This document shows, one piece after another, positions 1-54,264 of a stretch of DNA of 64,000 nucleotides (positions are counted from its first letter, which is position 1; every line of letters starts with the position of its first letter). The notes beneath the pieces were generated by a model, which saw nothing but the letters and a program-made list of their open reading frames with translations, was not told the origin of the DNA and made no database searches. Origin of the DNA: Fimbriosthenelais zetlandica (taxonomy: Eukaryota); contig OZ365113.1 of NCBI GenBank assembly GCA_977030845.1, positions 12,958,001-13,022,000 of the forward strand, read 5' to 3'. The position numbers were made by a program, and so were the translations under genes.

Positions 1-191
1 GGAACGTATCTACTCCCCATGGGCCTCACTGCCAACAAAGACAGCATCAAACGTCACTGGAAACTAGTTCTATGGACAGAAACTGTAAAAAGTTAAAAGA
101 ATATTGAGGGCAACAACATGATTTTGATGGTGTCAAAGACAAAACAAAGAATTCATACAATGTGATTGCAGGTATTGAATTCCGAGAATGA

Positions 192-229
192 GGGGGTGGG
201 GGGTGAAAGGGGGAGGAGGGGGGGGGGGG
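192..229 (+). repeat. G-rich tract, potential G-quadruplex
   Basis: GGGGGT GGGGGGT GAAA GGGGG AGGA followed by a G12 run; four or more G-runs. Confidence 0.7.
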
Positions 230-3200: not shown

Positions 3201-6200
3201 TGGGCAGTGCCACCTAACGTGAATCAACCTTTCATTATAAAAGAAGCAGCAAGGAAGAATCAAATTTGCATAACAAAACTGAAATATCAATACATTTATT
3301 TGGAGGGTTCCCCCCGAGGAGATTCGGTTACAGATATTCTATCCTCACCAAATTCCAAGCACAGTTCTTGCCACAATTTCCCTCCAGTATTGTATCAACA
3401 GAGAAGACATTGAGATCTAATTGATGCATGCCAGTGAGTGAAAAAATAACATCAAGAGAGGAAAAAGGGCCTGGATCCGACTGCAACTCGGCTCTATCTC
3501 GTTGATTAATTTTTCTCATCTCAGACCTATTTCCTTTAGTTTTGGAAACAATTAATCAGGAATTTCAAGCGGGGTTAATGAACTGTTGTGCTTTGCTTCT
3601 GTAATGACATTCAGATATGGCGACACTGAGGAATCTTTTACTTGAATATGGCAGTTAATGGGGCAAAACTGTGCAGTATGAAGCATCCATTACGACGGCA
3701 ATATACTTATTAAACTGAAAGCTGAGCGCATTAATATGGCACGAGTGGCATCCAAAACAGCTCTGTTTACAAAGCCAAAGAGTCGTTACATGGGGCCGAC
3801 TGGCGAGGTAATAGGTCACATTAATCTTCATCACATGTCTATGTATATGTGCGCTATGAAAAGTGACTTTTATAGTCAGTTTGATGATTTAAATATCTCA
3901 ACATAATGCCGGCAGGGAACTATAAATGGGCCAGTTCAATCAACCAAATGTATTGGTCAGCGTATGAATGTTTTTTTCCTGAGTGCATACATGTATTAGT
4001 GCTCAGCCATATAGGTTTTATAACAAATCATTAAATTCGGTGAAAGTAGGCACGGGCTGCAACAATGAGAGGCAGGACATCAACAGTGGTAGCATATAAA
4101 AGCTGCTAAAATGGTGGGTATGTGGGGACAATTAAAGTATGATAATTGTAAATTTTAAGCTATTCAATAAATGTTTGGAAGGTTCCAGCATCCACCCCTG
4201 TCAACAAAGTGTACAGATTGTGTGTTTGCTTTCGCCCCTCCCTCTAGGGTCCTTTCTACAACATGTGCATGTCATTCCTGTCCTATGAGAAGACCCAGTC
4301 CCCAGTCACCGTACTCCAACGACTACGAGAGATATCTCTAAGAGTTGCATGGACTGATCTCCAAAAGGGGAAGGGGCTGAATCTCATTAATACAAACCAT
4401 TATCTTTACTCAAAGCTTCAATATTAGGTTCATACATAAAATATAATTAGCTAGCACAGGCCCATAAACTATTATATTGAAGGCTTTCTTTTCTTCATTT
4501 CATTAATGCTTGGTCTAAAAACTCCCTGCCTTCAGGATGAGGAATAGGAGAAGTTTAATTTCCAGTAAGATTAAATTGAAACTAACGATGAGTTTCAATT
4601 AGAGGATAAGGTTACATGATTGCAATCAATTCTGCCACTTCCCAAATCTTCTTCCTTTTAACCAATTAATAAAATGTCAATGTCAAAATGTGATTGGTTT
4701 CTCCACGGTCCTTATGGTTCAGAGAAGTAGTAACATTGTGAAACTACACCGTCAGATGGGAGCATTTCAGACGTGCATCTCTTAGACGGGAATCATTTTG
4801 GTTTAGTGTACGTGTACACTCTAATACAAGGCCTAGCATCGTTTGGTATCACACTCAATAATGAGCGCTAGCGGCCAACAGTACCCAACTAATGGACTCC
4901 AGTCTCAAATATCACCCAAAAGCTTGAATTACAGTGCAGACAATTACATGGCTCGAACCTTTTTAAATAATAGGGTGTCCCTCCGAATTATAGAGCTGTC
5001 GCTACAGCTTCTGAAGAACAATATCCCATTTTGAAAAGTCAAATATATTATATTTTTCCCTCTATTAAGTTAGCTCAAAAATCCTAATCTGATACGGAAA
5101 TTGAGTATGTGATTCATAACCAAAAATCATGTCTCACTGCATGTAAAAAGAAACAAATTTAAAACCCAAACTGATAACAGGAATCCGAATGCATGCATGG
5201 TGCCTGAGAACTGAGCCATGATTTCTATATTAGAATGTTCTTTCAATGCCATCTCAGGATAAGGGTAGTGAGGCCCTAGTCAATGCCGACTGACAGATGC
5301 CGTGATGGCATCATCGGCTCCTGATGACCCTCTGACGGTAACTGTCACTACTCATCTGCTCCTCAACTGCTCTGGACGTGTGCCGAGTGACTCGTCTACA
5401 GGCAAACTGTGAAATTGAATGGCTGTTAGCTTGAGGACAACTTTCAGGATTAAATCCTCATTGCATCCTTCCCCCATATCCACTCACTCCAAAAGGTGGA
5501 GTTACGGATCGAGGAGGAAGTTAACATTCCTGGCTCAGGAATAAAAAAAAGATAAAGTTTCTTAACATAACTCTACGTAAACAATTATATGAAGCACCAA
5601 AAGGCAGGCGTAATAAAGGCATGTATATATTCACATGTGACACATAAGTGATGTCATAAAATATTATGCCAGAAGATTATTATGACCAGGTATATCATGG
5701 AACCGCTTCAACAATAAGATAGAAATCATGTGCGTGCTTAAACCTTTTTTCCGACCGAAAAGAAACTAATGAATATTCATCACTTGGCTGCTGTAGAGGG
5801 CCACTATACGAGCCAAACATTAGGCATATATATACACCACCTCCTCATAGGACTGTATGGAGGAGTTGGTCCCCTCCAGGCTGCCTCCCATGGCCAACCA
5901 TTGTGCCTTCTGGCGATAATACTATCATTAGGAGGCACACAACACACTTGTGCTCGTTTAGATGGTTCTTCCATGATGAATCAGCGGACTAAGGGTGCTC
6001 GGGGGTCCTATAAAATCCAACATAAACCCTCACAGCAAGCCCAATAATAAGCATGGACCCTCTCCGATGACCCCCGGCTTTCTCTAATGTTACTCCCACA
6101 GCCTGATCAAGGATAACTGTTTGGCTGTACATCATCCTGTTGCTCCTGTATGCCAGTGTCACCAAGGTCCGCATTCCTCCGCGGGCTGCCATCAACAATT

Positions 6201-9200
6201 GTAGGTGTTTCTTTATCACTCCGCCTTTGTCAAGGTGTGCTCAGCCGAGAGTTGTGACTTGGTGGTTTGGGACAACATCGGACATGCAATTATCAATAAG
6301 ACGGGGCCTCGGGGGCCAGGGGGAAGCCAGGATTAGCATGTACCTCCCAGCACAAGGGGGATGATAATGGTTCCATTGAGTGGACAATTGTTGTCTTGCT
6401 TGTGTGTTAATACTCATTTTCGGCCGTCCTATAGCCTGACTATTGGTGTTAAGTGTGGGCAAATTTACTGTGCAGATTAATAATCTTCCTCTTCATTACT
6501 GGGAGTTAATAGGGATGTGAGTGGTAATGCTTGTATAACATCGCTCATAGAATAGTGTTTAATACACCATTTCCCGCAAAGTATTCAGCAATTTGTTTCT
6601 CATTAAAGACTAACTGAGTATGGAGGAAGAATGAAAGATCCTCCTCCTACAGGTGGCCAATACGGAATATTTAACACTGGCATCCAGACCAACTATAATC
6701 CTTTAATGTCAACCGCCTATCAGTCAACGACACCCCGACATATAAGATTCATGGGGCTCTCTCACTGCGTTAAAACCTTGACAATATTGAATGTTTTTTG
6801 AGCAAATTCACCCAGAAAAACATTTCCTTCTCCGGCTTTCACATTCTCTCTAGGTCAGCTGAATATAAGGACGAAAAGGAACCCGGTCGCCAGTCGATTT
6901 CTTGCAATATACAATAGAGTGAATCAATGACAATATTACAGTGGAAACCAGCGGAGAGAAGGTACTTGAGTAGTATATGGGGAGTGTCCACAGAGCCTGG
7001 CAATATTGAGAGTAGTTTATGAAAATGGGGCAAATGTGACGGCACATAAAAGACCCTTTGGCCAGGCGTTCTCGCAATGTGCCTGTATATGATTACACTT
7101 TCCAATTCCACAAATACCCTCCGACAGCAATCCCGGTGGTGTACTTAAGCCTTGATGAATGAGTTATAAAGATATACTTAAATGACCTATGTTAACTATA
7201 AGACTATGCAGGGCAGTAAATAAACTGACAGAAGCAAATGAAACCACAATGCATAATTCATGACCAGAAATGAAAGTTCATCGATTCAAAAACCAAAATA
7301 ATAAATTTTCTTTTCCGGAACAACACAACTGAATAGTATCACGCACGTATCTTAAATAGGAAGCAATCTACCAAAAGTAATGTAATGAGGTAGTTCACCG
7401 TGGATATGTGATAGAAGCAGGTCCAGGCCTACTAAAATCCCATACAATACCGGAAAGAGCTCAACACTTTAAGTACCGTACTGCTCATGCAAGTCTACAG
7501 TTAACGACAATGAATCCAGTGGACTCTCAGAATAGATACAAGTTAGAAGAGAATCCTTGAAGGAACACAGTTCAATGCCAAAAAGATAGCGATAAAACAA
7601 AAATACTAACCAGTGTTCAGCATATATAATGAACGATCGACGATGAGCCTAACACAGATTTTTAAAAGTTAAACTCATTTTTAACTCTTTAAAATGACTG
7701 GTACAATCTGGCGTGATTTCTAAATTCAAAAGCATGCTTTATGGGGAAGCAATGTGGAGGAAAGGCATTCTTGTACTGAGGACAGGCCGATTAGCTCCAA
7801 CACTGACCCACACAAAAGATGGCTAGTGTCCATTAGGTATGTAGCGGTCAGTCCAGCTTACTTGGACTCGGCTGATTTTATGTGTGTCCGGCCTGGGAAG
7901 TGTCCACTAGATTAGGCCTGTAATGGTGAATCCATCCATCTATCACGAGCCCACGGCCCATAACGACAGAGAGCCAGGACTTAGCTTTTAGTCGAACGTT
8001 GACTTGTAGCTTCACTTGAGCTTATATCATGCGAAGAATCACAACTCATGCTTGTATGGCTGTATACTAAGAGGCAATGCCATTTACTGACAGACATGTG
8101 ATCATGGGAATGGGTGGAAAGAGAGAAACATGAGACATGTCATGCACTACACCAAGTGTTGCCCTATAGAGGTACTGATTGAACATTGAAAATCGAAACT
8201 TAAAAATGACCAGATCACAAACCCAACTCCGTAAAAACCTCATCTCTTGCGTACATCAGATCACATTCTGAAGCTTTTTTTCATCAGATGTAAATGATTT
8301 TTACATAAGTTTCAGTCCTGAATGTTTAGAATATATATCATGAAAAAATAAGAGAAACAGTTGTTTTGCGCACTAGAATTGCATACTATTTCGCGGAAAA
8401 AAAACAAAATCAGCACCAATTTGTGCAGATGATTAATAGAACATCGGAACACTAGAGGAGTTGTGGGGAGAGTAGGAGAGGACTTCATGCTGAGGATGAT
8501 GTACAATGGTTTGGATGCAATAAAGACTCATTTAAAGAGTGTGTATGTACAGCCTTGTCAGCACACGAGGATAATATAACAAAAGATAGAGAACTAGAAG
8601 GCAGCATAAATCAAGGAACATAGACCATCCCCTTCTTCACACTAATGTACTCTCAGAGGTCAGTACAATGTCTTGTGGTAGTGCTGCGATGAGCGGAATT
8701 CCAAATATGAAATATCAAAGGACTTCAAAAGATGGCATTAACTCTAAGGGCTCCAAGCCTGACACAGTTAAGCAAATTAAAAAGTTTTGGCTTTTCGTTA
8801 AAATCCATTCAGATGCATGTTTATGGAAAAGTTTTGGTGTTTTATTCATTCAGCCATGCACTCCCAAAGAAGTATTCGAATCATTTCTAAGAAACTTTTA
8901 TCAAGTTTCCAGCTTAGTGGGAATTAGGAGATGTTTGGAATCATGGTGGGGTAATTTTAATGGAGGATAGCTCTGAATAAATTTTCAATGCCCCATGTTT
9001 AATAATGGGAGGTTGATCAGCTGGGATGTTTTACTTTGGACTGAAATGAATATTGTGAAACCATGTTTTCTTAATGAAGCAAATCTAATTGGACAGTTTG
9101 GAGAAAAGCAGGAGCGAAGGCAGCCCATTTAGAGATTATCTTGGCCAGTGCAATCAAATCAAATTAAAAGTTTTTTAATCCCTTCAACCTTTTCTCATCA

Positions 9201-9404
9201 CGATGTAGCCTTGTTTACAGTGGAATCGCTCTATGGTGTTTGGAACCTAGTTTAATTTTATGTTCATTGTCTGCAGATGTAGCCCACTTTTCCTGCCTTA
9301 CAGGAAAGAGAAGGAATAATGAAGCAATTGGAAAGTTGGACTCTTTCCTCAAACCTCAGCAGCCATATGGAAATCTATTCACAAAACTACACAATTTTGG
9401 AGAG

Positions 9405-9444
9405 CATTCATTCATTCATTCATTCATTCTTTCATTCATTCATT
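9405..9444. repeat. (CATT)n microsatellite; (UGAA)n on the minus-strand transcript
   Basis: cattcattcattcattcattcattctttcattcattcatt, about 10 units with one interruption. Confidence 0.9.
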
Positions 9445-9557
9445 TCATATATTCACACAAGGAAAAGCACTAAAAAGACTATTGATAAGCATCAAGCATT
9501 ATTCACATAATATATGGGAGAAGCTTTCAAAATGAATTAGATTTTGGTAAATCCTAC

Positions 9558-9624
9558 CTTGATTTCCCAAGTGAAAAGCAAAGATTCCAGAAAGGCAGAT
9601 ATACATACCTGAAAGGAGAAGAAA
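9558..9624 (-). other. Candidate recursive splice site with 51-nt cryptic RS-exon
   Basis: Minus strand: atatttcttctcctttcag|GTATGT (junction 9609/9608); second donor AAG|GTAGGA after 9558. Confidence 0.55.
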
Positions 9625-10850
9625 TATTGGTTACTACTACAACATAAAATTGCGTTTCAAGTAATCCTACAGACCTAAATTCTGAACTCTAGTGCTGGAA
9701 CAAATATTTGACAGAAGGCGGCATTATATTGGTATACACCAAAGATTTTAACCAACAATTAAGGTATGAAAGCGTCAATGTAAAATGTGAATGTGAAGCT
9801 GTTAACATGCACATTAACCAAGTTAAGCTAAAGGACATGACATTTAAATATGTGTTTTTAAAAAGATCCATGCCTAGGGTTCTATTCAGCCTAAAAATAA
9901 GTCATATTGGAAACAATATTTCAATTACAAAGCAAATGCAAGCATTCATTTAGAAAAGGGGAATATGTCTTCCATAAGCTTTTGAAAGGGGAATATCAAT
10001 GAAGGGGGGAGTGAGCATTTGTTTCATTTGAAACTAATAGAAAAGACATTTTCTTTGCCACAGAAGGCCGTCAGCTATAGTTCTCTCTGTTATGAATAGA
10101 TTTCAAAAGGCAATTGTATCTCGCTGACATGCAATCAGTATAAAGGAACAATGTGAAATTAGATTGCTTCAGACGGATCAAAAAGGAGAGAGGCTCTACT
10201 TATTCTTCAGACGATGGCGATAGATATGCTTCTCTGGCAAAAGAGAACATAAACATTTCTAAAGGCACTGGCCTCAATCTGCCCAAGCTCCAGCTGCGCT
10301 TAAAAACGCGCTTCCAATTTGATCAGCCGGGAATATTTCATTCCCTCTCCGGCCTCTTCAGATGCCTAATCCAATGCTGATGCAACGGCTTTTTAACACC
10401 CCGCGTACTTTTAAAGGAAAACATTTTAGAATTATTCCATTACAAATATTGAGGACAAAGTAGGCAGGTTTTAGCTGGAGGCATATTTCAAAGGGATGCT
10501 TTTTGCTGCCCTGCTTAAAGCTATATAGAAGCTAGCTGTACGTCATTCACCGTGCCATTATAAAACAAAAGCCAAGCCGCATCTCCCTAAGTAAAATATT
10601 GGTTTTTGAAGAGATACAAAAAGCATGATAATTGAATGATACTTCGTGCATCGTAAAATCTAAAGGATCGCACTCAGGGAAGGAAACGATTCTTGAGGAT
10701 CGAATGGGATCTAATGGGTGGATACTCTTAGAGACACCTGGTGGGGTTGTTCTGACATATATGATGACAACTGTTAGTCATCCAGTCATCCAGCATGTCA
10801 CCCGGCTCCATATCATCATACTCATCATCTCTATATGCACACTGAGGCGC

Positions 10851-10878
10851 GGGAGGGGGTGGGGGTGGGGGTGGGGGG
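10851..10878 (+). repeat. (GGGGGT)n-like G-tract, potential G-quadruplex
   Basis: gggagggggtgggggtgggggtgggggg. Confidence 0.75.
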
Positions 10879-13800
10879 TAACAACTCCCTCCCACCTCCC
10901 CTATACTTCCCACCCCCAGAATATAGCTACATCAAAGTCATAGCATTTCTCTCTTTACCATCACCCAGATGTCGCCTTTGTATCTCCCCCGTGAAGAGTT
11001 CCACATTACCTACATGAAAGGTGCCCTTGTTCCTCAATGCTTGAAGGTTGGCTGAATTAGGAGGAAGAGAGATCCCCTCGTCTTTATCTGTAAAAGACGG
11101 CCCCGGTCCTCACAAAGGGGTTATTAATACAGAATATTAACACACATAAAGACAGCCCAGATCACAAGCCCCCCCCCTTTGGTATTTTGAAATACAGAAA
11201 AAGGAGCATATTCAATTACTGCAAAGAAATGAATAAGAAATGTTGTGAGTGCTTATGTATTGATTGTAAGAACTAAAAGCCTTCTGTTCTCCCCGAGAGA
11301 AGGAAAAGTGTATCGGTTATGTGAAGTAAAATACCAGCTAGCTTCTCCATAGGTTATCCTAGAATATGTCCTGAATGTAGGTAACATGATGTGCACCTTA
11401 TTATTTGTCATTTGTCATTTGTCATTTTCTATAAGTCTAGTGTTTCTGTGTCGTATTTCAAACTTTGTAATGGGAACAGTTAGGGGATCTCGCTCTATTA
11501 AATTTGAGATAAATAATTCGCTGGTTTTATCTTACAGAGCTCTTCATAATAAGAATACAGTATGTTTTGTCCCATGAAGGGAATGGACTTTTACAAAGTT
11601 GGTTCAAGGATAAGCAGGTAGACATAGCCCCCAGAGGAAATAACCTCGAGTTGTGAAGCTCTAGTTGTTGCGAAAAGGTAGTCTAGAACAATCAGATTCT
11701 CCAGTTCAAGAAATAAGATGTTTCCTGACGTTTCAGAAGGATACGAAACAAATAATTTAAAGTAATCTACTTCAAATGACATATATTAGGGAAAGGGAAG
11801 ACATCCATTACAATTCCATCAGAACCCTGAAAATGCTTAAAATACAACCCATCAGCTCTGCTCCCCTCCCCTCATGCGCACTCCCATCGTTTTCAAAAAG
11901 GATATTTCACCATGAGCATGATGACAATGTCCACCAATGCATCATTAAGCTGGCCTGTATACAGATGTGAGTATCTCATGCTCTACCCCTCACCTCTTCT
12001 ACCCTGGAGGTCTGGTGGAGGAGGTATAGGCAGGGTGGAGGGTTGGGACTGATGGTAACCTCCAGTCTTTACTGGGCTCGTCTACTGATTACTACTGTCA
12101 ACCACACCTACACACCAACAGCTGGCGTCTCCTTTGAAGCCAACGCTCAAAATCTCACAGGCATATATGTCATAAAGGTATACTAGGAATTTCTATGAAC
12201 TTTTCTGCAGGTTTTTAATTATTAAAATATTACTAAAATCAACAGGTTTTCGATGGAATATTGAATTCTAACGCTTTGACATAGTACATGCTTTAGACAT
12301 AAAAGGGAAATTCTGGGTAAATTGGAAATGCTCCATGCCAATTATCTTAATTATTGGAGCGTTGGCAACCAGATTTGAACAAATAGAATTAGCACTTCCA
12401 TTACATTTTGCATGTATATGTGCGTAATGCCAAGTTGCCAAGTCCTCTTCAAATAGGATACATACAAGGATGCATGTATTAGAATGTTAATCAGTTAAGA
12501 ATGCATCTTTAGATCTATTCATGAAAGATAATTGAACTAAAGAATCCTTGTCTTTCATAAAAGGATTGCATGACGTCCTCTATTGATTTGTCAGAATGTC
12601 TGGAACATGTATACATATATTATAAGGTGAATTGCATATCCACTGTTAACCTAACGTTTACATTAATTTAAGACTGACTAAATATGTTATAATACAATGC
12701 TAAAGGCTCAATAATAAAGTGGAGAGGTCAGATTGGCTCCATCACCCACAAACACTTTAGAGCACGCAGATATTACAAAGGTTTTAAACTCACGGATAAC
12801 AGATGCAAGTGAGGAAGGCTGAATATAAAGAAGCCAACATCTGACAATTTAACAAGACCCTACAGGTTTTATGAGGGAAGAACCTTCAGTGAAACATTAA
12901 AATCCAGTGCCTTCAAAAAAGGGGAAAAGGTCAAATTAAATCGGACAAATAGATCCATTTCTTTCATCATTAAGAAAACTGAATCCAAAATAAATCAAAC
13001 AAAAGAAACTTGATTAGCCTATTCAGATTCTGAAGGGAAGAACCATGTGGAAATGATTCGGAATAAAACTGAAATGCTGTATCAAACCAAAACCCATTAA
13101 CAATGAAACAAGGAGTTTCATTTGGAGATAAAAGGCACTGTAATGTAATAACAGGAAAATGTTATCAATTTCCGAAAAAGATTAATGGCACGACTTTTGT
13201 GAAGAATTGGCCAGCCCAACAATACATTAAACCTTAATGAGATGTGTTTTTAACCGATCCTGTACAATGGGAAATACCAAAACCTAATTTTGAGGGGAAA
13301 GTTAATTCCTCAGAGCTTCTGAGGGTCACTGCAAACCAATTGAAGAAAACATGCACACTTAAAGTAATAAAAGAATGACAATACAATACAACAAACAAGC
13401 TTTGTCAACATGAAGTCTCTAACAAGGCATTTCTACCAGGAAACTATCCTTTAAAGATTCACGTTACCATAAAACGTATTAATATGAGGCGTCTGTTATA
13501 GGATCAATCATCAGTTATTATTCTGTACATATCATCTTTAGTTCTATAACGGCTCAGAGCTCATATCCATGTCTTTGAATCTCAGTGGGAAGCATTATGT
13601 ATATATATAAGAGAACCATATAAGAAAATGTCTTGTATTTAGCAAGACAACAGGTATGATACAATTCACACAATCTGCTTGATAAGCATTTCTTTCCTTT
13701 TAGGCTTTCTAACCATAGCGAAAAGCAATAACGTGGAAGCGGATTGTCAAAAGGCATTATTACTGTCAGATATAAACCTAGAATAGACTAAAAGATGAGA

Positions 13801-26026: not shown

Positions 26027-29000
26027 TGGGAGGCTGGTTGTGTCTATTAATATCCATTAATTACAGAGGCAGTTGGTTGGAATCGACCCATCAATGGAGA
26101 GATGTCAGCAGAGAAGAAATATCTGAAGATCATTAGTGTGATGAGAAGTTAATTACTGATAACGGAGAGAGGGAAGTTGTCTCAGCATACTACGTAATTA
26201 GAGAGTATGCTACATAGGGAAGAAAAGCTGATGAAAGGTTTGAGGGTTTCGCTCCCATTGATCCCTTCAAAAGATCCATGTTTTGTCTCCAAAAAGAGGG
26301 ACAGCTTTTCAGACGCTGATCACATTGATGGGTGGACTTTTACAGAGGCTCTATTATAAAGACAGGGGCTTGCTGATTAATGTAAAATACAGAGTCATGC
26401 AATGAGCCGTTTCCAACCAATATATTGATGGTAAAGGCTTTGATGAAAGCATTACGTGACTGACAAGAATGATTGAGCGGATGGGCTACCATACCATTAA
26501 TAAGAACTGTACTGATAAAAGACAAAAAGGGGCATTCATGTATACATGCATCTAGTATATAATTTACATGAAAAATGCGGGGGGGATTGTTGACATACAT
26601 GATAATGAAGTGTCATAGCGATCAAATGTAAATTTGCTGTGCATCAACATTACCGACAATTCTCAGCAAATTTGATTCATTTATACCATTTACGACGATA
26701 ATTAATAGGAAAAAGTATTTTTCGGACAAAAGGTCTATAAAAGTATGGCTGAACCGTGAATGTTTAATGCATTTGCTGAATGAAGCAAGTACCAAAAACG
26801 GGACTAATAATGCAGCCAATGTACAAACAGTAATGGAGGACATTTCGGGGTTCTATTCCTGACACGTAGCTCAAATTTCTTATCCCATCATGGCGTTAAG
26901 CTACATCACTTTACGGTTTTGCTGACAAAAATGTCTTCCTAATTAGGTTACATCCAATGCCTCTCCTTGTTATCACAAATGAGTACATGCCCGTCAGGCA
27001 GAGAAAGCAAGTTCAAAACTAACTTGCATTATCATCTTTCATATCCATATATTCAACAACATCCCAACAAGTATACAACTGGGCTTCAATTAGCCCAATT
27101 ACATTTGGTCAAAATTTAACGAGTTAACTAACAGCTGAATAAAAAAAACCCAATAACAATCGTTTGAGTTTTGAGGCAAGATTTCTACGCATTTTCAACG
27201 ATAATATGAAGATATATATAAGATAAATCTATTTGAGTTGGTTTGATCTCTCCCTACATGAACCTAACTGTCCTCACCACACCCAGGAACCATTTTACCT
27301 CTTATCCCTCTCCACCCCTTATCCCCTACCTCTATACCCCCGCCACCCGGCCATTTACCAAACAACCTCCCCCCAACATAAGAGCCAATCCCAAGTAAGG
27401 CCAATGAAATACCGTTGATAAAATCGGCGAAATTGACCATCTATAACCCAAGTTTCTCTGGCTCTGTGACATGATGGCTCTGCAAGATGAATATCTCCCA
27501 ATGAAATTGGGAACGTGGGGTCGGATAGACGCATAAACAATCCCCCTATAGATATACACCATACACCGATCAATAGAGGCCCCAGCCTCTGCTCCCGTCA
27601 GATTGGTTTTTTGTATATGAATATACAGAACCAGTCATTTCTAATCCATTCACATACATGGTGCACTTCCATATTATGCAGGTTCATGGACACCATTGGA
27701 AGAGAGTGAAAATATCCAAGACATGGAATTTTCAACACGGTGAAATGGGTGTACGCTTGGTAAGCCAGGGGTGTACATAATGCAAAATCAATGGGCACAC
27801 TCCAATGGGATTGACATGGGGCGCATGAAGATATTTCGTTACAACAAGCACCAATTCCACTTCAAAAGTGCTCGGCCTTTCTTAGGGATGAAGACAGAAA
27901 ATATGCCTGTGGGTTGCCATGGAAACAGGAGATGATCGATGGGTGCTGATGCACCGGTCATTTTGAAAGACACAAATATCAAAGTGGGACTGATTGGCTC
28001 CCACAAATCGGACACGATGCAATTCAAGAAAGCGATCTTGTCATTATGAATGACGTACTTAATTCCTCGTTACTCCTGTAGAGGGCAGACGGGCTCGATA
28101 TATGGGCTCTGCAGGGGGAAAAATGGAATTAGCCGCGGGATTGTTTGCTCTGAAAAAGAGCATGGGGTTTTCCATGGGAGCACTTGTCTACTCAAATAAC
28201 GTTCACTGACTATGAATGTCGGTAATCAGATGAACGCTTCACATGACGTAGCTGATCGAGACATGGTCTCCTTAGTCAGACGGAGGGCATTGTCAAAAAC
28301 AATAAATACTTAGATCTCAAGAAGCAGAAGAAGAGATATATATACAAGAGTATATGATTCCAGATGCCATGTGAAATGGTTAAATATTAATGACTCAAAC
28401 TAAATAATAAGTTATGAGAATGGCGAGGGAGAAACGACTTATAGGAGGTTGACCTTGGTAAAGTGATGACAGCATCAGTGAAATAAAACCTCGTAAAAAG
28501 GGACTGGATCCCAATAGGAGAAAGTAAATCCGAGATGAAATAAATAGGGACGTCGTTGACTTGTTCCACAGAACTTCATTGTCAGCTTTCCTTACAGAAG
28601 AGAAGGAAACCTCTCTCAGGAGGAGCTGTTCACAAAAGCAGATCTAGACTGACTGGAATTTTATGTAGATTATGGGACGCACACACGGGTCAATACACAA
28701 TGAATGATGAAGGCTGTATTTCCTCTAGTTCCTGGCAGAACATGATGGGGATGTAAAGGATGATCAAAGTAGAGGGGCCTTCTAGAAGCCGGCACGATAC
28801 ATTAGGGTGGTTCAGAGGAAACGTCCGGGCCCAAGCTTTTACCGCCTCAGGCCAGCGCACAAGAGCCTAAATCCAAGGCAATATACAGAGGCAGGGAATA
28901 CATAATACCTAATGGCGACATCCCCTTCTATATTGGAATATGCTTGAGCTTTTATCATGAGAATCGGAGAGCGAAGTGTCTCTTGTGTTTCTCCGTCAAT

Positions 29001-30669
29001 CAGATGCTAAGATTCACCTATAAAGTAGTATAGGGAAATTGGTCTAAAAGCATGGTTGCTCATTACGGGGCAGAACACCAATTATTCTGTTTACCTCGAA
29101 ATCATATTTTTAAGAATTTTGTTTGTGCTCGGTCTTTAATCTAATTCAAACTGAACGCTGCAACTGGTGAGAGAGGATGGGTGTTAATCTGGAGTGGCCC
29201 TGTCCGCTGGTTTCAGCAGGAAGATGAGATGGTGGCAATATGAGATACATCATTGCAGGTAGTCTGGGGGCTTTGAAGATGAGAACTTATATGTCCAGAA
29301 AGTATACACTTCTGACCTTTCAATATCTCATCCAACTTCCACCTGGTCTGCATAGACGAAATCTGAGAAAGACTAGAGAAAATGGACCAGTATCGGTTAA
29401 GTTGAACAAACCCCCTCACGGCCCGCGGCATCATTCGCGACCTTCATTTATCAAGGTAAAATTTTATAGCAAAAATGTCAACTCAGCGTTTCTATATATA
29501 GTTGTATATAGTTTCGAAGATAGATATACTAATTCCACAACAAAATGATGGCTATTTTCATCAGGGGATTTAGACAGACATTCATATAAATAGGCTGGAA
29601 GCCCTTGCTTTTGATGGCAGAAAACGATTTCCAATATAGAACAAGAAAGGAAGTTAATGAAATCAATTTCCGTTTCACAAAAGTCATCTAATAATGTAAC
29701 AGGCAGGTCCTTTGAAGTGGCCATCTTCATCCATTCGTAACCACTCAATGCGACTGGACGCAATGTCATATTACGCGACAGAAGGAACATCAAAACTGAG
29801 AATATCGATAAGGAAATAAATCAAGGTCTATCCGAGAGTGCCGCTGGCATCAGTTGTCTCGTCCTTTTCTTTGAGATGGATCGTGATGGATACATTTCAT
29901 GACGCAAGGATCAAGGAGCGCTCCGCTCCACTGACTATGTTCAGAAGCACCAGATACCATTCACTCCACAAAGATGATATAGTTCTAGTATTGCGCCAGT
30001 CCTATTCATCTCAACTATATTCCTGATTTCAAGTCTATACTTTACTATTGATTTCTCGAGGTAGAAAGCATTTCCGTCCAACTGCTTTTTACCACTTTAT
30101 TGTTGTGGAACCCATGAATTTTCCTCTCCCTTTGAAAAGAGGGTAGAGTGCAATTCGATTCCTATCAATGGAAGGCAATCTATTTTATCAAAGAAAGGGG
30201 GCTGTAAAAAGGAATATTGGGGCAGACATTTTGCGGCAAGTCAATTTCCTCCATTCACTTAATGGCAAAAGCACTGCTTTGAGGGTGGACGTCAGCTTGT
30301 ATTGTATACTGCACATTTATCCTCTCAAAAGAGAGCCTATTCATAAACATGGCGAGTAAAAGATACCAGTAAAGGATGGTCATTATTAAATTGACAAATA
30401 TAGTCAGCAATATGATGTGTTCAAAACTTCTGTAAAGGAATGAAATATGAGACCTATTGTGTGGCCATGCACATCTATTTTATAACAGAAAAATTGGAAT
30501 ATTATATATCCGATACCATCAATGTTAGATAGAGAGGTGAAACATTCGAGAAAACTGAATTATAATTAGATGTTGCAAAATGATGCAGCCATCCACTTAT
30601 AAGAAACTTATAATATAAAATGAGTGCATCTGTGACCACGACTAAGTCTATAATCCATATAATTATGTG

Positions 30670-30737
30670 ACTCACCTTCAATGACATTTTTGGACAGGCA
30701 ATAATTGACACTTACCTGGAAAAAACAAGACAAAGAG
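30670..30737 (-). other. Candidate recursive splice site with 40-nt cryptic RS-exon
   Basis: Minus strand: ctctttgtcttgttttttccag|GTAAGT (junction 30716/30715); second consensus donor GAAG|GTGAGT after 30676. Confidence 0.65.
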
Positions 30738-33700
30738 ATGTTAAATATATATACCAAACACCAACTATAGGATTGCTAAATTAGTTATAGATTATACATG
30801 CGTGTATATACATATAACACAGACATATTGTATTATGTCAGAGTACTGTGATTCCAAGAAAAAATATATATAGACTCTGCATGATGAGAGTATTCTACGA
30901 GCGCCTATTTGTTTTCCATATAAATCATTCATTTTGAGTTCTACATTTCTTCATGTACATACGATAAGCATTTGGATTTGTAAATCAATTGATTAACCAA
31001 TATAGATGAAGCTTAATTACTATTGCCAACAGACCATTCAATATTTAACTGTTTCGGAGGGATTGCAAGTCAGTTGTATTGGAATTCAAATTCATTTACC
31101 TTGGTAAAATAGCAAGTATTATGAATGGTCAGAACCGCTTGTATATTAAAAGCACCGGTGCTATACATGTTCTTTTGTTTTGATATTTCAGATATTTCAC
31201 CAATGAGTTCATTGCATGTTCCCTACATCCCTCAACATCCACTGAGAAGGTGCTACAAATGCTTCAAGACGGGATGAATGTGCAAATCTCGTGTCCCATT
31301 TATTTCAATCGAGCAAAAGATGACTTCAAAGGCCTCTGATGACGGGCTTTCTTACGGAGGCCATTGAGAGATTAGTTGCATTTTAGAAGTGATGAACTAA
31401 GGAGGGAACGAGGCACAATTAGAGGGATCATGGAATTAGGGAATGCATCACTCAGAGAGTGGCTCATGTTGATGTGATATACTGGCATTTCCACCCCTTG
31501 ACAAGTAATTAAAACCAACGGAAAGCGAGATAGAGGGTAGCTGCCATATACTGTGTCTTCTCGGAGATTGATTATCTAGTGGCAATAGAAGGCTTGGTCT
31601 TTAGGGGCTATGATAGATGAGAGAATTGACAGTAAAACAAGCCCAAAATTACTTTTGGAACCTGAATAATGATATGGTTGATTAGAGCTGTGCATGTGTA
31701 TAAGGTATTCACATCAAGTATATCAGTGGGCTGATTTTCCTCAGCTGTCACTTCTAAAATTAAAGTAATCAGCGGGAATGGATTGACCTAGGATCAGTAG
31801 CAATTAAAAAGACATATATCTGAAGGAATGGTTTTGATCGTTATCGAGGCTGATAATTAATTGGATTCATTTTGACACATTCGTGATTAAAATATCTATT
31901 CGAAGATAGGAAAATGTTATCATTTGTTCGATTTGAAGCCATCATCTTCAAAACAGCTAGATCATGATCAAGATTCCCAAAAGCTTGGAAATTATTTATT
32001 ACTGAGGATTCATAAGGATATGCAAGGTAAATAATGGCTCCACATAAATAGCTGCAGCCTCTATTCAAACACTTAGTTGAAAATAGTTTCAAAATTTATA
32101 TGTCTAATTCTTCAGTAAATTGAGAACATAATATTCCACTCGGGCTGAGATTAGAGTACATTAAGTGCTTCATAAGCGAGACGATCAACAGTAATTTGAG
32201 CAGAGAATGGAAGCTTTAGATGTACTTAATTCAAACTTCAATTTGTACTGCACTCTTCCACTGCCTGTCTACATAAAGTTCCATCTGAATGTCTTGTCTG
32301 CACGAATCAAATTTCCTGACCACGATGGCTATCTCAGCGAGTCAATAGATCCAGGCCCAGCTAGGATCCCAGCGACTTCCATCAGGACGTATAATTGATT
32401 TACATCGGAAAGAATATTCATTCCTTCTTAAGTAGCAGAATGCATGCTCTAAATCAATCAGGAATCAAAGGAAATGGGATAGCCTGAAATGGGTTAATTC
32501 AATTATGTTTCACCCATTTTTTGGATGGGAGTTTCTATCAAGTAAAATTTAATATCATAATGGGACTTGAGATGTCGCACTTTGGCATTTTCTTGCAAAT
32601 ATTCTTGAATGGAGAATTTAGCATAATTCATTTGGTCTAAAAACGAAATGGGCCTGATATGGAGGTAATGGAAAGTACGATTGTCGAAATTCGTATCCTG
32701 CTTATTCGGGAATTTTTAAAGTCATAATCTTTACATGGAGGGATCAGAAATGATCTTTCGTATTCCTTGTCTTGGTGGTATGGGAGAAGAATGAGCACAG
32801 AGTTAAATAATTGTCACTCATATAAATGGCAAGGAATCTTACATGTATACATATGGAATTGTCTAGAGAACCGAGGACAGATTTTTAAGTACCGAAGGAT
32901 CTAAATACCTACATAAAACCACTGTTAGCGACCAACATTATTTAAACATCCAAATAAAGCCATTAACCATAATGGAGAAACCCCTACACACATGCACTTG
33001 GCATATGGATCAATATATTGTGAGATACATTATATAAAACAGCATATCGCTATCTATTTTATCTTTTTAGAATAAAACATGCCAGGCATATAGCCGACAT
33101 CGTCTTGTTGTATATATCCATATCGTTCTATATAAGGCTTGCTTTATCCATTTATCCATTCCTGATTACCCGAGGCAGAGTTGCTGGGAAAAAGAGAAGG
33201 TATTTTTTCTATTTCATGGCAGAGAGTGTGTTTGATGGGCCATCTATAAAGGTGGGATCTGTCTATACATCAATCACGCTGGGAATATGAATATATTCAG
33301 AAGGGAGGGATTAAATCCATCATGCTTGCTGACAGTGGCAACCAGCCAGAAGGGGGACCAGTAGTCTATTACCCTTGACCCATCTTGTCATATATCCATA
33401 AGTAATTTCTGAAAGAGGATCAATGTCCTTCCAGATCGGTGGAATAGCCAAGAGGCGTGGTTGTAATATTCGATCGAATTTATACAAAGAAATGTACATT
33501 AAAATTCTTGGAAGAATAAGGAACTTCTGAAAAAAAGTCATTGCTTCTGTTCAGACTGATGGATGCGATCTACAGTCACACAATTTCACTGATAAGAGGG
33601 TTCTCCACAGGAAAGAATAAAGTAATAGATTAAGAAAGATTAGGAAAGAATAAACATCAATTTTGCTCTAGCTTTCATGAATATTTGTGAAAATAGAAAG

Positions 33701-35679
33701 GAAAGCAAACTGCATGTTTCAAATTTCCTCTGATGACTTAATAATTTAAACAAGGGAAATTACATTTCAGGGGGGATGGAACACCATCACATATGGCTTT
33801 ATCTGCCAAGATAAAGGCCAGTCTCCAGACAAGCTTATAATGTTAACCACGTAGCTTTATCAAGGAGGGTCCACTTCATTTACAAGACGGCAGGTCAATA
33901 CAGCCCTTAAACTGAAGATTTTCAAGTTTCAACGATTAAAACGCTTCATGTTCATATTCCTCACCAACAATCAAAGGCAAGAGGAAAATTCTAGATCCTT
34001 CTACCCCATAACTGAGAATGGGATCGATGCCGAAGCACTTTAGACAATATCAATTTTGCCATTAGTTGCGGGGTGTGTGTTAAGTGAATGGGCTGGTTCG
34101 GAGGGCCTCAGATGACACACCTCTCTCACCTGGCTTTGATATATCACCTGCCCATCATTAGCACCTTTACTGACAACACTTAAGCGTTGCCCTTTTTCCC
34201 TTTCTCTCCTGTCCCCACTTCAGTCTCTAGTGCTTCTCTTGCAGATTTTAGTAAGTGATAGTCTGATAGATTCCAGTGCAAGAACATCCTCCTCTCTCAC
34301 AAGAGTTAGGTAAATGCCAACATTGTATTGTTTTTTTTTCTATTATAAAATGAAATTATGGGTATGAACCATAGTCTAAAGGAAAGGCATGGTATATCAC
34401 AATTAGGAAAAATCGTATTGTGTTGTGCCATTGAGAAAGACTCCTCAGGCATCATAATGTGCTGAACACACCACTGAGCAATCTGCATGGAATGACACAA
34501 GGTTGAAGAAAGCTAAATCAGAAATTGGACTTCATCTGCTATTTTCCTAATCATCCCCGAACAATAGCCCAGCTATCTCCAATCAGCCCATCTACCTCAT
34601 TCTTTTTGACAACGTCACGTTCCTCTATACGAGCGATTTCCTCTCGTGATTAGAAATTTTCAATTTCAGCTTCGATAATTCAACAAGGCTAAAATACATT
34701 CATCATTTTTTGTTAAATAGTCCACCAGGCATACACAGTAATAGTCATATGACTGAACATGCACCAATACGGACCTGCATAGAACTGCACAGCAGAGAGA
34801 CAGCCATTTTGTTCGGATTATTCATTTCCACTTGAATCGCGACTATACATAGTGGTTGCTTGATAGAATGTTAAGTCACGCGGCAATTCATATTACAAGC
34901 CTAGAAAGATAGAACTCTATATGATAGGACAAACATGGTGAGGCCTGCCTGACCTAGTTCTACAAGGAGCTGCTCCGCCCTTTCTCTGAGTCAATTATTT
35001 CCACAGCGTGCCTGATCCCAAAAACCAACAGAAGAAGGGAGGTGTACAATCGGCTCAATTCCGGTTACATCTATCTTTTGAATGGATTTTAATTTTCTGG
35101 GTAAGAAACTGTTAGAATCTGTTGTGGGGTGCCTCATTTGGAATGCATTGGATATAGGTGGTTAGAATTGCAAATAGAAGCAGGCCAATTATTCACGGCG
35201 ATTGCATAAAAATAATGAGAGGATATTGAGGAATAAGGTAAAATGTCAAATCGAAGTGATACCTTCTCTAACATTGTACTGATGCAAGAGGAATAACACA
35301 AACAAAAGTAGGCCTTATTATAAACATAATTAATTTCTTAAATACAAGAAATTAATTTTCATAAAAGGGATCAACAAGTTATACCAAATTTAGTAAATAC
35401 AACTGAGGCAGACTCAGATAAGAAATAGATTAGCAAAAAGGCAATTGTTGACATGTATTATGTTATTGGGAAAGCAAAGGTAAAAAATAGAACAAAATAG
35501 AGAGTGACTCGTCACCGGAGTGAGGGGTACTGTGCAGTAGGCAAGTTTCAAGGGAAGGCCAAGCATTCTCATATACACCGGACCCTTTATACTTCGAAGG
35601 CAACCTTCTGGCTGCGATAGGGTCAAAGCACTGTAAGCACTGACGCTATAGGGCTTTTTGAGATTAAGCATTTTATGTC

Positions 35680-35711
35680 AGGTCATGTCCAGGTCACATT
35701 TTTATTGACCT
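35680..35711 (+). promoter_or_regulatory. Perfect DR5 nuclear-receptor element plus a third half-site
   Basis: AGGTCA-tgtcc-AGGTCA (35680-35696), then TGACCT at 35706-35711. Confidence 0.4.
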
Positions 35712-37999
35712 TTCAAGGACGTACATGTTTTATATCATTTCAGTGTGAGGATATACGATACACTTCCCATTCCATTCAGAATCGCATAAATGATCTCCTC
35801 AGTTTAAACGTTCCTACCATAGTCCATACTTATGTCACTCTTACAGCCGAATCTACATTGAGCATATCTGATGCATATATAGGCTTAATATTAATGCGGC
35901 TGCATCCCCAAAGTATTAAATTCACATGGGCCTCGGATACTAGGTTAAAGTTTCTTACAAATTGAACAAAAGAGCGTAAGGTGATCTGCTCTGGTATTTA
36001 TGCAAACAATAAAAATGCATCGATTTCTCCATGGCAACGTCAAACATAAATATCAGAGAAGACGAGGCATTGAGTCACGGTTCCAGTAGTTCTCTAATTG
36101 CTTAATGCAATTGATATGACAAAAGAGCAAATCGACCAGATCCAACACTGGTCTTAGAACAAAAGTAGCTATACCCTGATGATTTAGGTGTTGCTGTTTT
36201 CTGATGCTCTACGGCCTATTAATATAGTGATCAGGTTTATTGTTACATTTGCGAGTGGCTCAACTTACATATGTATTTGTCTTGTGTAGTAAATAAAATC
36301 GAGGCTTGATGACTATATGACTATTATGTCTATAACATTGGTTTTATAAAGGAGCTGATTAGACCTGGGTTTCGATTCCAAGTACAACACTAGAGAGACT
36401 AAGAGAATAGTGAATACTTAAGTCTCCATCTCTTGATAAAAAGGGCTCTCAGTGAGCGATTGCGTCTTGGGCCATTCATCCATCAAGTGATGTCTATTTA
36501 CTTTACATACTAAACATCTGCAGGCTAAATGCAGAGCAGGACCTCAACTCCTTGCTGAGCAAATCGCGTCTTGCCTGGAGCCTCGTGGGGTTGCTCGGCA
36601 TGCGTGTTCCTGTCCGGACTAGCCACAACACAAACACTTCATCATTTTACAGCATGTCGTTCCAGCACGACAGAAAATCCCCGTGAAACTTCACTGTCTA
36701 TGATTTACTGTCCATTCCCATCTATACACACCCCAAGTGACATGTCCACTCCTGGGTCTACTTTGTGGGCATTGGTCTTAAAACCAGACCAATGCCCACA
36801 AAAGATTATTATATTCATATATTCCATATATCCTTTCAGGTGGAAAAATTCCTCTCTGAATGGCTCCCATATTGGCATGGTATTTTAGAGGAAGGAGAAG
36901 GGGGGGAATGAGTGGGGTATTGATTGTTTGATGTGACCCGGCCTTGTTTGCCTGATCCCAAAGCAATATGAAATTTGTAGGAGAGGAATATTTTCTTCTT
37001 CTATTTCTATTCTTTGTGGTAGTAATTCGGCAGTGTCAAGCAGACATGCAGACTGGTTCTGCTGGTGAGTATATTTGTGTGGGGGTGGGTGTGTAGTGTC
37101 TAGCTAAGCTATTATGAAGCTGTCACTTTCAATGAGAATCAACGTCAAGTACTATGAAGCAAGTAATGACTTTTAAAGTGACATTCACATCCAGAAAGCC
37201 TGCATCTCACCCTCAGATAAAACACAAAATATTCTTCAATATTTTCCCTTTCACTGTGCAATTTATCTTAATATGTTCAAATTTTAATATTCAATTAATA
37301 TTTTGGTTCCTCCCTATAACAGTGAGATGGGCCAATTCTCTGAAACGATGTTTTTGAAACCCAGAAGAAATAAAGGATTTGAAAATATATATTGAAGATG
37401 ATAGTTCGTACATAAGTTTCACCATCAGCTAGCCATATTCTCCAATGGGAGTACTAAGAAAATTAAATGCTGGAGATTAATTAACACCATTTTTCATAGT
37501 AGAACAAGAATGGGGAACGGCAATAATTTCGCAACAATCTACAGACATTCACAGAGGGGTACTCTGTTTCATTTCTATTATCTACAGACAATCGCAGCAA
37601 GGGAATTCAGCAGTGCCGAGGTAACTATTGCCGAAAGCGAAATCCATGAAATTACACTCTCAGAGAACTATTTTTCTCCCAAGTTATTCAAAGGATTTTC
37701 TAGACACTCAACAGATCTTTTCTTGGGTACTGAGTACTAACACCTTTCATGGTTCTATCAACATTGTAAGCAGAATACAAAATCGGCTGAGAACAAATGT
37801 GTAGCAATGGTAATGAAATAGTATGCAGTGCATTTACGTACATTTGTACTTCCATAATTTGTTTAAAACCATTTCCTAATGAGCACAAAACATATGTTCG
37901 CAAAGGACAAAAGCATGTATACATATAATGTCATTGAATCATTGTCATCAATTGGCTTCCCGCATTCTTCCGTCGGACAATTCCTTGAGAGGAACTTAC

Positions 38000-38584
38000 C
38001 CATTTTTGGAAGTGGTTGTTGTAGACCGGGGGAGGATACATGACATGGGGGCTATTCATTGTCCCTGCGGCAGCCGCTGCTCTCTGCTGTTGCTGCTCTT
38101 GGTGTCTCTGTTGTTGCAGAAGCTGTTGCCTGTGGTCAATCTGTGCCTGATTTGTCACCTCCTGTGTTTCTCGCTGTTGGGGTAAGATGGCTGCCACTAA
38201 TCCCCCTCCACCATCGCCCGCCCCGACGGCTGGGGGTGGCTGAGGGCCGGCTGTAGCCTCCACCACTACTGTTGTTGAGATACAAAAGGTCCCAAGCACT
38301 CCCGTACTACTTCCTCCTCCACCACCACCACCTTCACCTCCTACAGTTCCCTGGTTGGAGTCTTGCTGGAGATTATGATGGGGATATGTCTGAGGGTGTT
38401 GTTGCCCTTGCTGTTGGGAATAGTCCTGCACTGAGAAGGCTTTCTGGGGTGGAGGGTGAGTGACAGAGGTAGCACAGGTGGGCTGCGTGTAAGGTAAGAG
38501 TTGCTGATCGGGATACTGGCCAGGTGAGGAGAGGGGGTTAGCCACACCGCCTCCCACTCGGCCGAGGCGCGCTACTTGATTCAT
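38000..38584 (-). CDS. First coding exon (195 codons, phase-0 end) of a large minus-strand gene; Q/G/P-rich low-complexity N-terminus ending MNSPHVMYPPPVYNNHFQKW; product unidentified
   Basis: GC-rich 230-codon ORF with polyQ/polyG/polyA; consensus donor TGG|GTAAGT at 38000/37999; acceptor ctgactctttgtatccgcattatctgttag| before 38635; first in-frame ATG at 38584. Confidence 0.75.
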
Positions 38585-44500: not shown

Positions 44501-44734
44501 ATTAGATCGTCTATACCAGCCAGCAATGTATTATCAAAGCCGACACTGCCAGCTGTAAAAAGCATGCGTTCCCATGGCAACCGGAAAAATTCTATTAATC
44601 TTAGGGTGGAGAGGAGATGGATCTTCGTTCTCCATAATTTATCAGATCTGGTGTTGACAGGTTCGCCGCGACCCTCACCAGGTAATGCAAGTTGACATTG
44701 AGTGATGGTAGTGGTAAGCGCGAACATACACTCG

Positions 44735-44754
44735 CCCCCCCCCCCCCCCCCCCC
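44735..44754. repeat. C20 homopolymer
   Basis: Run of 20 C. Confidence 0.85.
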
Positions 44755-45465: not shown

Positions 45466-45583
45466 CTCATTTTCACGTTGGGTAGGCTAAACGTGCTGCT
45501 GGTCCTATGTGTTGCTCATATCGATGGACGGCAGACGATGGCTATGGCTATGGCTATGGCTACAATAAGGATCGTGGAGATAT
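45466..45583 (-). other. Probable non-coding 5' leader exon (118 nt) of the minus-strand gene, containing (ATAGCC)n
   Basis: Acceptor ttttattttcag| and donor GAG|GTAAGT; GC-richer than flanks; no long ORF. Confidence 0.65.
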
Positions 45584-47380: not shown

Positions 47381-47404
47381 CAAAATCAAGTAAAGTTTTT
47401 TTAA

Positions 47405-53934: not shown

Positions 53935-54264
<330 letters not shown>

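What the first reader, a model, noticed from the sequence alone, without database searches (positions are those of the whole stretch)
9558..38000. Ladder of candidate recursive-splicing sites in an intron longer than 38 kb
After the donor at 38000 I found no further coding exon in the window. The sense (minus) strand instead has strong polypyrimidine-YAG acceptors fused directly to 5' splice sites at 30716 (cag|GTAAGT), 26007 (tag|GTAAAG), 19804/19785 (tag|GTATGA, cag|GTAACC) and 9609 (cag|GTATGT). These cut the intron into 7.3, 4.7, 6.2 and 10.2 kb pieces (seen). Only one comparable site was seen on the other strand (40849). This is the ratchet-point / RS-exon architecture established in Drosophila (e.g. 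Ubx) and long vertebrate neuronal genes. I know of no description in lophotrochozoans, so this would extend the mechanism to another lineage (inference).
Basis: partly seen in the sequence, partly recalled or inferred. Interest (0 to 1): 0.85.

Follow-up and report, generated by a model that had tools for sequence, protein, structure and literature searches.

The report
Two predicted recursive splice sites
Inside a gene gap (intron) of more than 38,000 bases in an unidentified invertebrate, two of the six flagged spots are built like the known "ratchet points" that let a cell cut a very long intron out in steps; the other four look like chance, and no RNA data could be examined.

Summary
All six AG|GT junctions are at the stated coordinates on the minus strand. 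Only two hold up. Site A (30716, Y-tract-cag|GTAAGT) and site E (9609, cag|GTATGT) each join a strong acceptor to a strong donor. Each has TT at -6/-5 and a second strong donor 40 nt (AAG|GTGAGT) or 51 nt (AAG|GTAGGA) downstream. That is the short cryptic "RS-exon" layout described in Drosophila and vertebrates.

A literature-based criterion expects 0.002 such units per 38 kb (Markov simulations). Two were observed, and none in the other 90 kb of single-strand sequence in the window.

Site 26007 has a good acceptor but a weak donor and no second donor (about 0.11 expected by chance). Sites 19804 and 19785 are at chance level. The "ladder" of 7.3/4.7/6.2/10.2 kb therefore shrinks to steps of 7.3 kb, 21.1 kb and more than 9.6 kb.

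The host is a 195-codon Q/G-rich first coding exon (38000-38584, minus) with no detectable homologues. A T>A skew supports minus-strand transcription from about 48 kb to beyond position 1.

No sequencing run was listed and no close relative's DNA was reachable, so usage and conservation are untested.

This is a new member of a known kind. The scan has noted similar RNA-unverified sites in other windows of this genome.

The parts
38000..38584 (-). First coding exon of the host gene. It has 195 codons, is Q/G-rich, starts at an ATG at 38584 and ends in phase 0 at TGG|GTAAGT. The intron starts at 37999.
   Evidence: The open run of 234 codons was not reached in 2000 shuffles. Codon-usage LLR is 49.9 in this frame against <=10 in the other five, trained on the two other genes of the window. 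Donor PWM is 8.9. There is no Pfam family and no homologue.
30716..30740 (-). Ratchet point A, acceptor half: ...ctctttgtcttgttttttccag with AG at 30717-30716, TT at -6/-5, 14/16 pyrimidines and a TTAAC branch-like motif at -25.
   Evidence: It is the strongest acceptor on the sense strand of the interval, at 15.4.
30676..30715 (-). Predicted 40-nt cryptic RS-exon A. It begins with the regenerated donor GTAAGT (12.8) and is followed by a second donor AAG|GTGAGT (12.2; GT at 30675-30674). Its length is not a multiple of three.
   Evidence: These are the only two donors >=12 on the sense strand in 38 kb, and they lie 40 nt apart. A-class sites are expected 0.0011 times per 38 kb, and with a second donor >=12 occurred 0 times in 10,000 simulations.
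9609..9633 (-). Ratchet point E, acceptor half: ...ccaatatttcttctcctttcag with AG at 9610-9609, TT at -6/-5, 13/16 pyrimidines and TAGTAAC 23 nt upstream.
   Evidence: Acceptor 11.2.
9558..9608 (-). Predicted 51-nt RS-exon E. It begins with the regenerated donor GTATGT (10.0) and is followed by a second donor AAG|GTAGGA (8.5; GT at 9557-9556). It is open in all three frames.
   Evidence: The probability of a donor >=8 at 25-80 nt downstream of a random position is 0.023.
26007..26030 (-). Site B, tag|GTAAAG. It has a good acceptor (13.1), a weak donor (5.7), CC at -6/-5, and no donor >=6 in the next 15-120 nt. It is not supported as a ratchet point.
   Evidence: This class is expected 0.11 times per 38 kb.
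19785..19825 (-). Sites C and D, tag|GTATGA and cag|GTAACC, lie 19 nt apart. Both halves are weak, at chance level.
   Evidence: Scores are 3.9/6.1 and 6.5/7.9, with no TT at -6/-5.
1..37999 (-). The intron runs off the window and is longer than 38 kb. Predicted removal steps are 37999-30716 (7,284 nt), 30715-9609 (21,107 nt) and 9608 to beyond position 1 (more than 9.6 kb).
   Evidence: T>A skew of the minus strand is 0.062 (z 9.5) here and 0.068 over 38601-47500, but 0.001 over 48001-64000. No coding signal was found. There are no Rfam families and no tRNAs.

Best explanation
The minus-strand gene whose first coding exon ends at 38000 has an intron of more than 38 kb. I propose that this intron is removed stepwise at two recursive splice sites of the RS-exon type.

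Proposed steps (all inferred):
1. The exon is first joined to the acceptor at 30716. This acceptor is recognised by exon definition together with the donor 40 nt downstream.
2. The junction recreates CAAAAATGG|GTAAGT. This regenerated donor, competing with the GTGAGT donor at 30675, is then spliced to the acceptor at 9609.
3. The same happens there, with regenerated donor GTATGT and a competing donor 51 nt downstream.
4. A last step joins to an exon beyond the window.

If the downstream donor wins at A, a 40-nt frameshifting exon is included, which would be a likely poison isoform. If it wins at E, a 51-nt frame-preserving exon is included.

What is shown: the sequence anatomy and its improbability by chance. 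What is inferred: every splicing step. Sites 26007, 19804 and 19785 are taken as chance AG|GT occurrences.
For: - Both sites join a strong acceptor to a strong donor.
- Both have a second strong donor at +40 or +51. This matches the cryptic RS-exon described for Drosophila, which is short, about 50 nt and usually out of frame (PMC8605326).
- Both have TT at -6/-5, as do 99.5% of fly ratchet points (bioRxiv 10.1101/006163).
- They are the only two short exon-like units on the sense strand of the interval.
- The literature-based criterion expects 0.0022 per 38 kb. Two were observed, and none in 90 kb of control strands.
- Steps of 7.3 and 21.1 kb lie within the fly range of 2.6-63.6 kb.
- The upstream exon is coding by frame-specific codon usage.
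- The minus strand carries a T>A skew from about 48 kb to position 1.
- The sites lie in unique sequence within the window.
Against: - There is no RNA evidence of any kind, because no run was listed.
- There is no conservation test, because no relative's DNA was reachable.
- The downstream exon of the intron was not seen. The host exon has no homologues, and its frame reads on for 23 codons past the donor to a stop at 37931, so a single-exon gene is not excluded.
- Markov nulls underestimate real pyrimidine tracts. A site equal to E on AG|GT score stands on the + strand at 40849, and the 15-mer core with one mismatch is not enriched.
- The window was picked from many, so site E alone could be a scan-wide chance hit.
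Confidence: 0.6

Rival explanations
1. The units at 30715-30676 and 9608-9558 are ordinary alternative (cassette or poison) micro-exons of the same gene. They are spliced in or skipped conventionally. The GT at their first bases is never used as a donor.
For: Each unit has a strong acceptor and a strong downstream donor at micro-exon distance. The 51-nt unit is frame-preserving and open. At site A the downstream donor (12.2) is nearly as strong as the regenerated one (12.8).
Against: It is very unlikely that two independent micro-exons both begin with GTAAGT or GTATGT after CAG. The whole unit (AG|GT plus second donor) is expected only 0.002 times per 38 kb. In flies, a consensus donor at the start of an exon is re-spliced after joining (PMC8605326).
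Confidence: 0.17
2. All the sites are chance juxtapositions in a pyrimidine-rich sense strand and have no function.
For: - The minus strand is T-rich, which favours pyrimidine tracts.
- An equal AG|GT score occurs on the + strand at 40849.
- The short core pattern with one mismatch is at expectation.
- The perfect 16-mer core is expected 0.03 times per window, which is about 20 times in the 692 windows noted for this genome.
- Three or four of the six listed sites are indeed at chance level.
Against: A perfect site plus a second consensus donor 40 nt away was not produced once in 10,000 simulated introns. Two complete units were seen where 0.002 are expected, with none in the control strands. 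The two strongest donors and the strongest acceptor of the 38 kb coincide at one spot.
Confidence: 0.13
3. The sites are real splice signals but belong to another minus-strand transcript, such as a non-coding RNA or a downstream gene's alternative 5' exons. The 195-codon ORF would then be a single-exon gene ending at the stop at 37931.
For: The frame stays open 23 codons past the proposed donor, and AATAAA-type signals follow at 37288, 36241 and 35706. The ORF has no homologue that would fix its exon structure.
Against: The exon ends at a consensus GTAAGT in phase 0. AATAAA-type signals occur 1.3 times per kb here, so they carry no weight. The T>A skew is continuous from about 48 kb through the exon region to position 1.
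Confidence: 0.1

Closest known systems
Drosophila intronic ratchet points with cryptic RS-exons (Ubx, kuz, Bx, luna; Hatton 1998, Burnette 2005, Duff 2015, Joseph 2018; read here in PMC8605326 and bioRxiv 10.1101/006163)
   Same: The shared features are the (Y)nNCAG|GTAAGT core, TT at -6/-5, a prominent pyrimidine tract and a short downstream cryptic exon of about 50 nt with its own donor. Unit A is also out of frame. Both lie inside a very long intron, with steps of 7-21 kb that fall within the fly range.
   Different: The organism is not an insect. There are no junction reads, no lariats and no conservation data. Site E has GTATGT rather than GTAAGT. The host gene is unidentified.
Vertebrate RS-exons in long neuronal genes (Sibley 2015; Blazquez 2018, as cited in PMC8605326)
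   Same: Recognition works by exon definition of an RS-exon with two competing donors. Inclusion of the RS-exon can act as a poison or quality-control isoform.
   Different: Vertebrate cases are few, and many are annotated expressed exons. Here neither expression nor an EJC effect is known, and the intron is far shorter than typical vertebrate RS introns.
Ubx micro-exons mI/mII (expressed 51-nt recursive exons)
   Same: Unit E is 51 nt, frame-preserving and starts with a regenerated donor, so it could be an expressed RS-exon.
   Different: There is no evidence that it is ever included. Its sequence (VCISAFLESLLFTWEIK) has no known relative. The equal length is probably a coincidence.
Computationally predicted RP-site enrichment in long introns of insects and sea urchin (Shepard et al. 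2009, PMC2773006)
   Same: This is also a sequence-only prediction of ratchet-type sites on the sense strand of long introns in non-fly invertebrates.
   Different: That study was genome-wide and used sense/antisense ratios. This is a single intron, so no ratio with statistical power can be given. No lophotrochozoan was included there.

Membership tests
Recursive splice site (ratchet point) of the RS-exon type | A strong 3' splice site (pyrimidine tract-YAG) is fused directly to a strong 5' splice site (GTRAGT-like). | tested here: met
   Met for 30716 (15.4/12.8) and 9609 (11.2/10.0). Not met for 26007 (donor 5.7), 19804 or 19785.
Recursive splice site (ratchet point) of the RS-exon type | A second 5' splice site lies a short distance downstream and defines a cryptic RS-exon of about 50 nt. 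| tested here: met
   AAG|GTGAGT at +40 (12.2) and AAG|GTAGGA at +51 (8.5). There is none after 26007. After 19804, the only downstream donor is site 19785 itself.
Recursive splice site (ratchet point) of the RS-exon type | TT at positions -6/-5 of the acceptor (a fly feature, present in 99.5% of ratchet points). | tested here: met
   TT at 30716 and 9609. The others read CC, TG and TA, and the + strand site at 40849 reads AG.
Recursive splice site (ratchet point) of the RS-exon type | The site lies on the sense strand inside a very long intron. | tested here: inconclusive
   There is an upstream coding exon with a consensus donor and a T>A skew over 1-47.5 kb. No coding exon was found in 1-37999. 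However, the downstream exon is outside the window and no transcript evidence exists.
Recursive splice site (ratchet point) of the RS-exon type | The AG|GT core is conserved in related species. | not testable with these tools
   The exon has no homologue in either protein library. The genome is not in the contig collection. The nearest relative of the neighbouring GPCR is a 73%-identical protein on a 3-kb contig. The metagenome scans found nothing.
Recursive splice site (ratchet point) of the RS-exon type | Exon-to-ratchet-point junction reads, recursive lariats and saw-tooth nascent RNA coverage. | not testable with these tools
   No sequencing run was listed for either query, so read laying could not be used.

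The most novel reading that the evidence does not exclude
RS-exon-mediated recursive splicing operates in a lophotrochozoan (annelid-like) animal with the same signal grammar as in flies: TT at -6/-5, CAG|GTAAGT, and a cryptic exon of about 40-50 nt. Together with flies and vertebrates, this would place the mechanism at the base of Bilateria. Unit E would be a regulated 51-nt recursive micro-exon comparable to Ubx mI/mII.
Probability: 0.4. Interest if true: 0.55.

Novelty: new member of a known kind. Interest (0 to 1): 0.4.

Why it matters
If RNA data confirm it, this intron would be an example of recursive splicing outside insects and vertebrates. The searched literature holds no substantive report for annelids or molluscs. 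It would also show that the fly signal grammar, including the cryptic RS-exon, is shared across protostomes.

Practically, the two sites and their 40-nt and 51-nt units should be kept in mind when annotating this gene. The 40-nt unit would be a frameshifting poison exon if included. On its own, without RNA, this is one more good prediction of a known mechanism.

Tried and rejected
- RNA evidence: two run searches, one on the exon plus flanks (RNA) and one on the exon (any kind), listed nothing. Junction, lariat and saw-tooth tests were therefore impossible.
- Gene identity: Pfam, the feature atlas (only low-complexity look-alikes below 0.9), the word-indexed protein search and the exhaustive HMMER search all failed for the 195-aa exon.
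- Orthologous locus: the neighbouring GPCR's exact product is not on record. Its 50% relative lies on a contig with ORF-style gene calls and no useful synteny. Exact 22- and 23-mers of sites A and E are absent from metagenome contigs.
- Repeat origin of the sites: no second copy of any site region exists in the window. This cannot be tested genome-wide.
- Nested genes or ordinary exons: the codon-usage scan and phase-0 ORFs after every acceptor gave nothing above the antisense background. Ten open stretches had no credible Pfam family. There is no Rfam family and no tRNA.
- Rejected readings: a five-step ladder, because sites B-D fail the donor, TT and second-donor tests. Also a strong strand contrast as evidence, because it is only 4 against 4 window-wide at lenient thresholds.
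Full report
**What is in the sequence**

The window is 39% G+C with no N. On the minus strand, an ATG at 38584 opens a 195-codon Q/G-rich frame that ends in phase 0 at TGG|GTAAGT. The last exon base is 38000.

This frame is coding by two tests:
- The open run of 234 codons was not reached in 2000 shuffles.
- A codon-usage model trained only on the other two genes of the window scores 49.9 in this frame and at most 10 in the other five.

The exon has no Pfam family. It has no relative in the word-indexed search or in the exhaustive search of 1.8 billion representatives.

The minus strand carries a T>A skew of 0.062 (z 9.5) over 1-37999 and 0.068 over 38601-47500. The skew is 0.001 over 48001-64000. 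This fits one minus-strand transcription unit that starts near 48 kb and runs off the window at position 1.

**The six sites**

I scored every AGGT on both strands with generic metazoan acceptor and donor matrices.

| Site | Sequence | Acceptor | Donor |
|---|---|---|---|
| A, 30716 | ...ctctttgtcttgttttttccag\|GTAAGT | 15.4 | 12.8 |
| E, 9609 | ...tttcttctcctttcag\|GTATGT | 11.2 | 10.0 |
| B, 26007 | tag\|GTAAAG | 13.1 | 5.7 |
| D, 19785 | cag\|GTAACC | 6.5 | 7.9 |
| C, 19804 | tag\|GTATGA | 3.9 | 6.1 |
| 40849 (+ strand) | ccag\|GTAGGC | 11.1 | 10.0 |

On the AG|GT score alone, the + strand site equals E.

**What separates A and E from the rest**

- Each is followed by a second strong donor: AAG|GTGAGT 40 nt after A (12.2) and AAG|GTAGGA 51 nt after E (8.5). 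B has no donor >=6 in the next 15-120 nt, and the + strand site has none either.
- Each has TT at -6/-5. B, C, D and the + strand site do not.
- On the sense strand of the 38-kb interval there is one acceptor >=15 and there are two donors >=12, and all three sit at site A. The only two short exon-like units (acceptor >=9, donor >=8, under 100 nt) are 30715-30676 and 9608-9558.

These features match published descriptions of fly ratchet points:
- The core is (Y)nNCAG|GTAAGT (PMC2773006).
- TT at -6/-5 occurs in 196 of 197 ratchet points, and the steps removed range from 2.6 to 63.6 kb with a median of 16 kb (bioRxiv 10.1101/006163).
- The cryptic RS-exon is short (about 50 nt), poorly conserved and usually out of frame, and its donor competes with the regenerated one (PMC8605326).

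**Chance**

Simulated introns came from a third-order Markov chain trained on the sense strand, which keeps its pyrimidine bias. In 10,000 runs of 38 kb:
- A-class AG|GT sites occurred 0.0011 times per 38 kb.
- A-class sites with a second donor >=12 did not occur at all.
- B-class sites occurred 0.11 times per 38 kb.

I then fixed a criterion from the literature rather than from the observed scores: at least 12 of 16 pyrimidines, TT at -6/-5, YAG|GT, donor >=8, and a second donor >=8 at 25-80 nt. It expects 0.0022-0.0023 units per 38 kb for orders 3 and 5. Two were observed, A and E. None was found on the antisense strand of the interval or on either strand of the remaining 26 kb.

Caveats:
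- Markov nulls understate real pyrimidine tracts.
- The + strand site at 40849 shows that E-level AG|GT scores occur in control sequence.
- The tool's own shuffles give 0.03 expected for Y8AGGTRAGT in the window. They give 2.17 expected against 2 found for a 15-mer with one mismatch.
- The window was chosen from at least 692 windows in this genome.

Site A survives all of this, because the second consensus donor adds a factor of about 0.002-0.005. Site E survives mainly because it shares the intron with A and has the complete anatomy. B is a plausible chance event, and C and D are ordinary.

**Other content of the interval**

- No site region is repeated in the window.
- Phase-0 reading after every acceptor >=8, and a codon-usage scan of all open stretches, found nothing above the antisense background.
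- Ten open stretches gave no credible Pfam family.
- There are no Rfam families and no tRNAs.

I therefore see no ordinary exon or nested gene, although short exons would escape these tests.

**Mechanism proposed (inferred)**

1. The exon ending at 38000 is joined to 30715. The site is recognised through exon definition of the 40-nt unit.
2. The regenerated donor ...ATGG|GTAAGT is then used to splice to 9608.
3. The regenerated GTATGT then splices to an exon beyond the window.

The steps would be 7,284 nt, 21,107 nt and more than 9.6 kb. At A the two donors are nearly equal (12.8 against 12.2), so some inclusion of a frameshifting 40-nt exon is conceivable. At E the regenerated donor is the stronger (10.0 against 8.5), which predicts skipping. 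If the 51-nt unit were included, it would keep the frame.

**What could not be done**

- No sequencing run was listed, so there are no junctions, no lariats and no saw-tooth coverage.
- The genome's own proteins are not on record.
- The closest relative of the neighbouring GPCR is 73% identical on a 3-kb contig. The best named relative is Platynereis at 38%. This fits a lophotrochozoan origin but does not prove it.
- A 50% relative lies on a contig without useful synteny.
- Exact cores of A and E are absent from metagenome contigs.

Conservation is therefore untested.

**Comparison and novelty**

This is the known ratchet-point/RS-exon architecture. The library holds no substantive paper that links recursive splicing with annelids or molluscs. 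However, sense-strand enrichment of such sites was computed long ago for insects and a sea urchin, and the mechanism is regarded as unified across metazoans.

The scan has already noted several similar, RNA-unverified predictions in other windows of this same genome. A separate first-reader note on site A and its 40-nt unit agrees with what I found.

Verdict: two good predicted recursive splice sites, not a ladder of five. This is a new member of a known kind and of moderate interest.

Noticed in passing
window 51501-53645 (+): A 714-aa open frame with a C2H2 zinc finger near each end (Pfam weak, E 0.009). It is divergently oriented to the minus-strand gene and is probably one large exon of a zinc-finger protein.
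   Followed up: partly
window 56925-58166 (-): An intronless rhodopsin-family / Srw-like GPCR of 414 aa. Its best relative is 73% identical and known only from a Logan contig. Platynereis dumerilii orphan GPCR 2 is 38% identical.
   Followed up: partly
window 48259-48482 and 48497-48735: A tandem duplicate of about 230 nt at 88% identity, in the presumed promoter region between the divergent genes.
   Followed up: no
window 40849 (+): An AG|GT site ttgttttttaagccag|GTAGGC with acceptor/donor scores equal to site 9609. It has no TT at -6/-5 and no second donor, and it lies antisense to the gene's upstream intron. It was used here as an empirical control.
   Followed up: yes
window 23047-23091 (+): A run of about 45 G (a C run on the minus strand) inside the intron. 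It creates a spurious proline-rich ORF on the minus strand.
   Followed up: no
window 62411-62793: A 71-nt inverted repeat (82% identity) flanks tandem repeats with periods of 31-42 nt rich in GCGATC.
   Followed up: no
window 38435-38452 (-): An 'FSVQDY' stretch near the N-terminus of the 195-aa exon resembles an eh1/TN repression motif, and the exon ends in ...NNHFQKW. This was judged by eye only and gives no support for any family.
   Followed up: no
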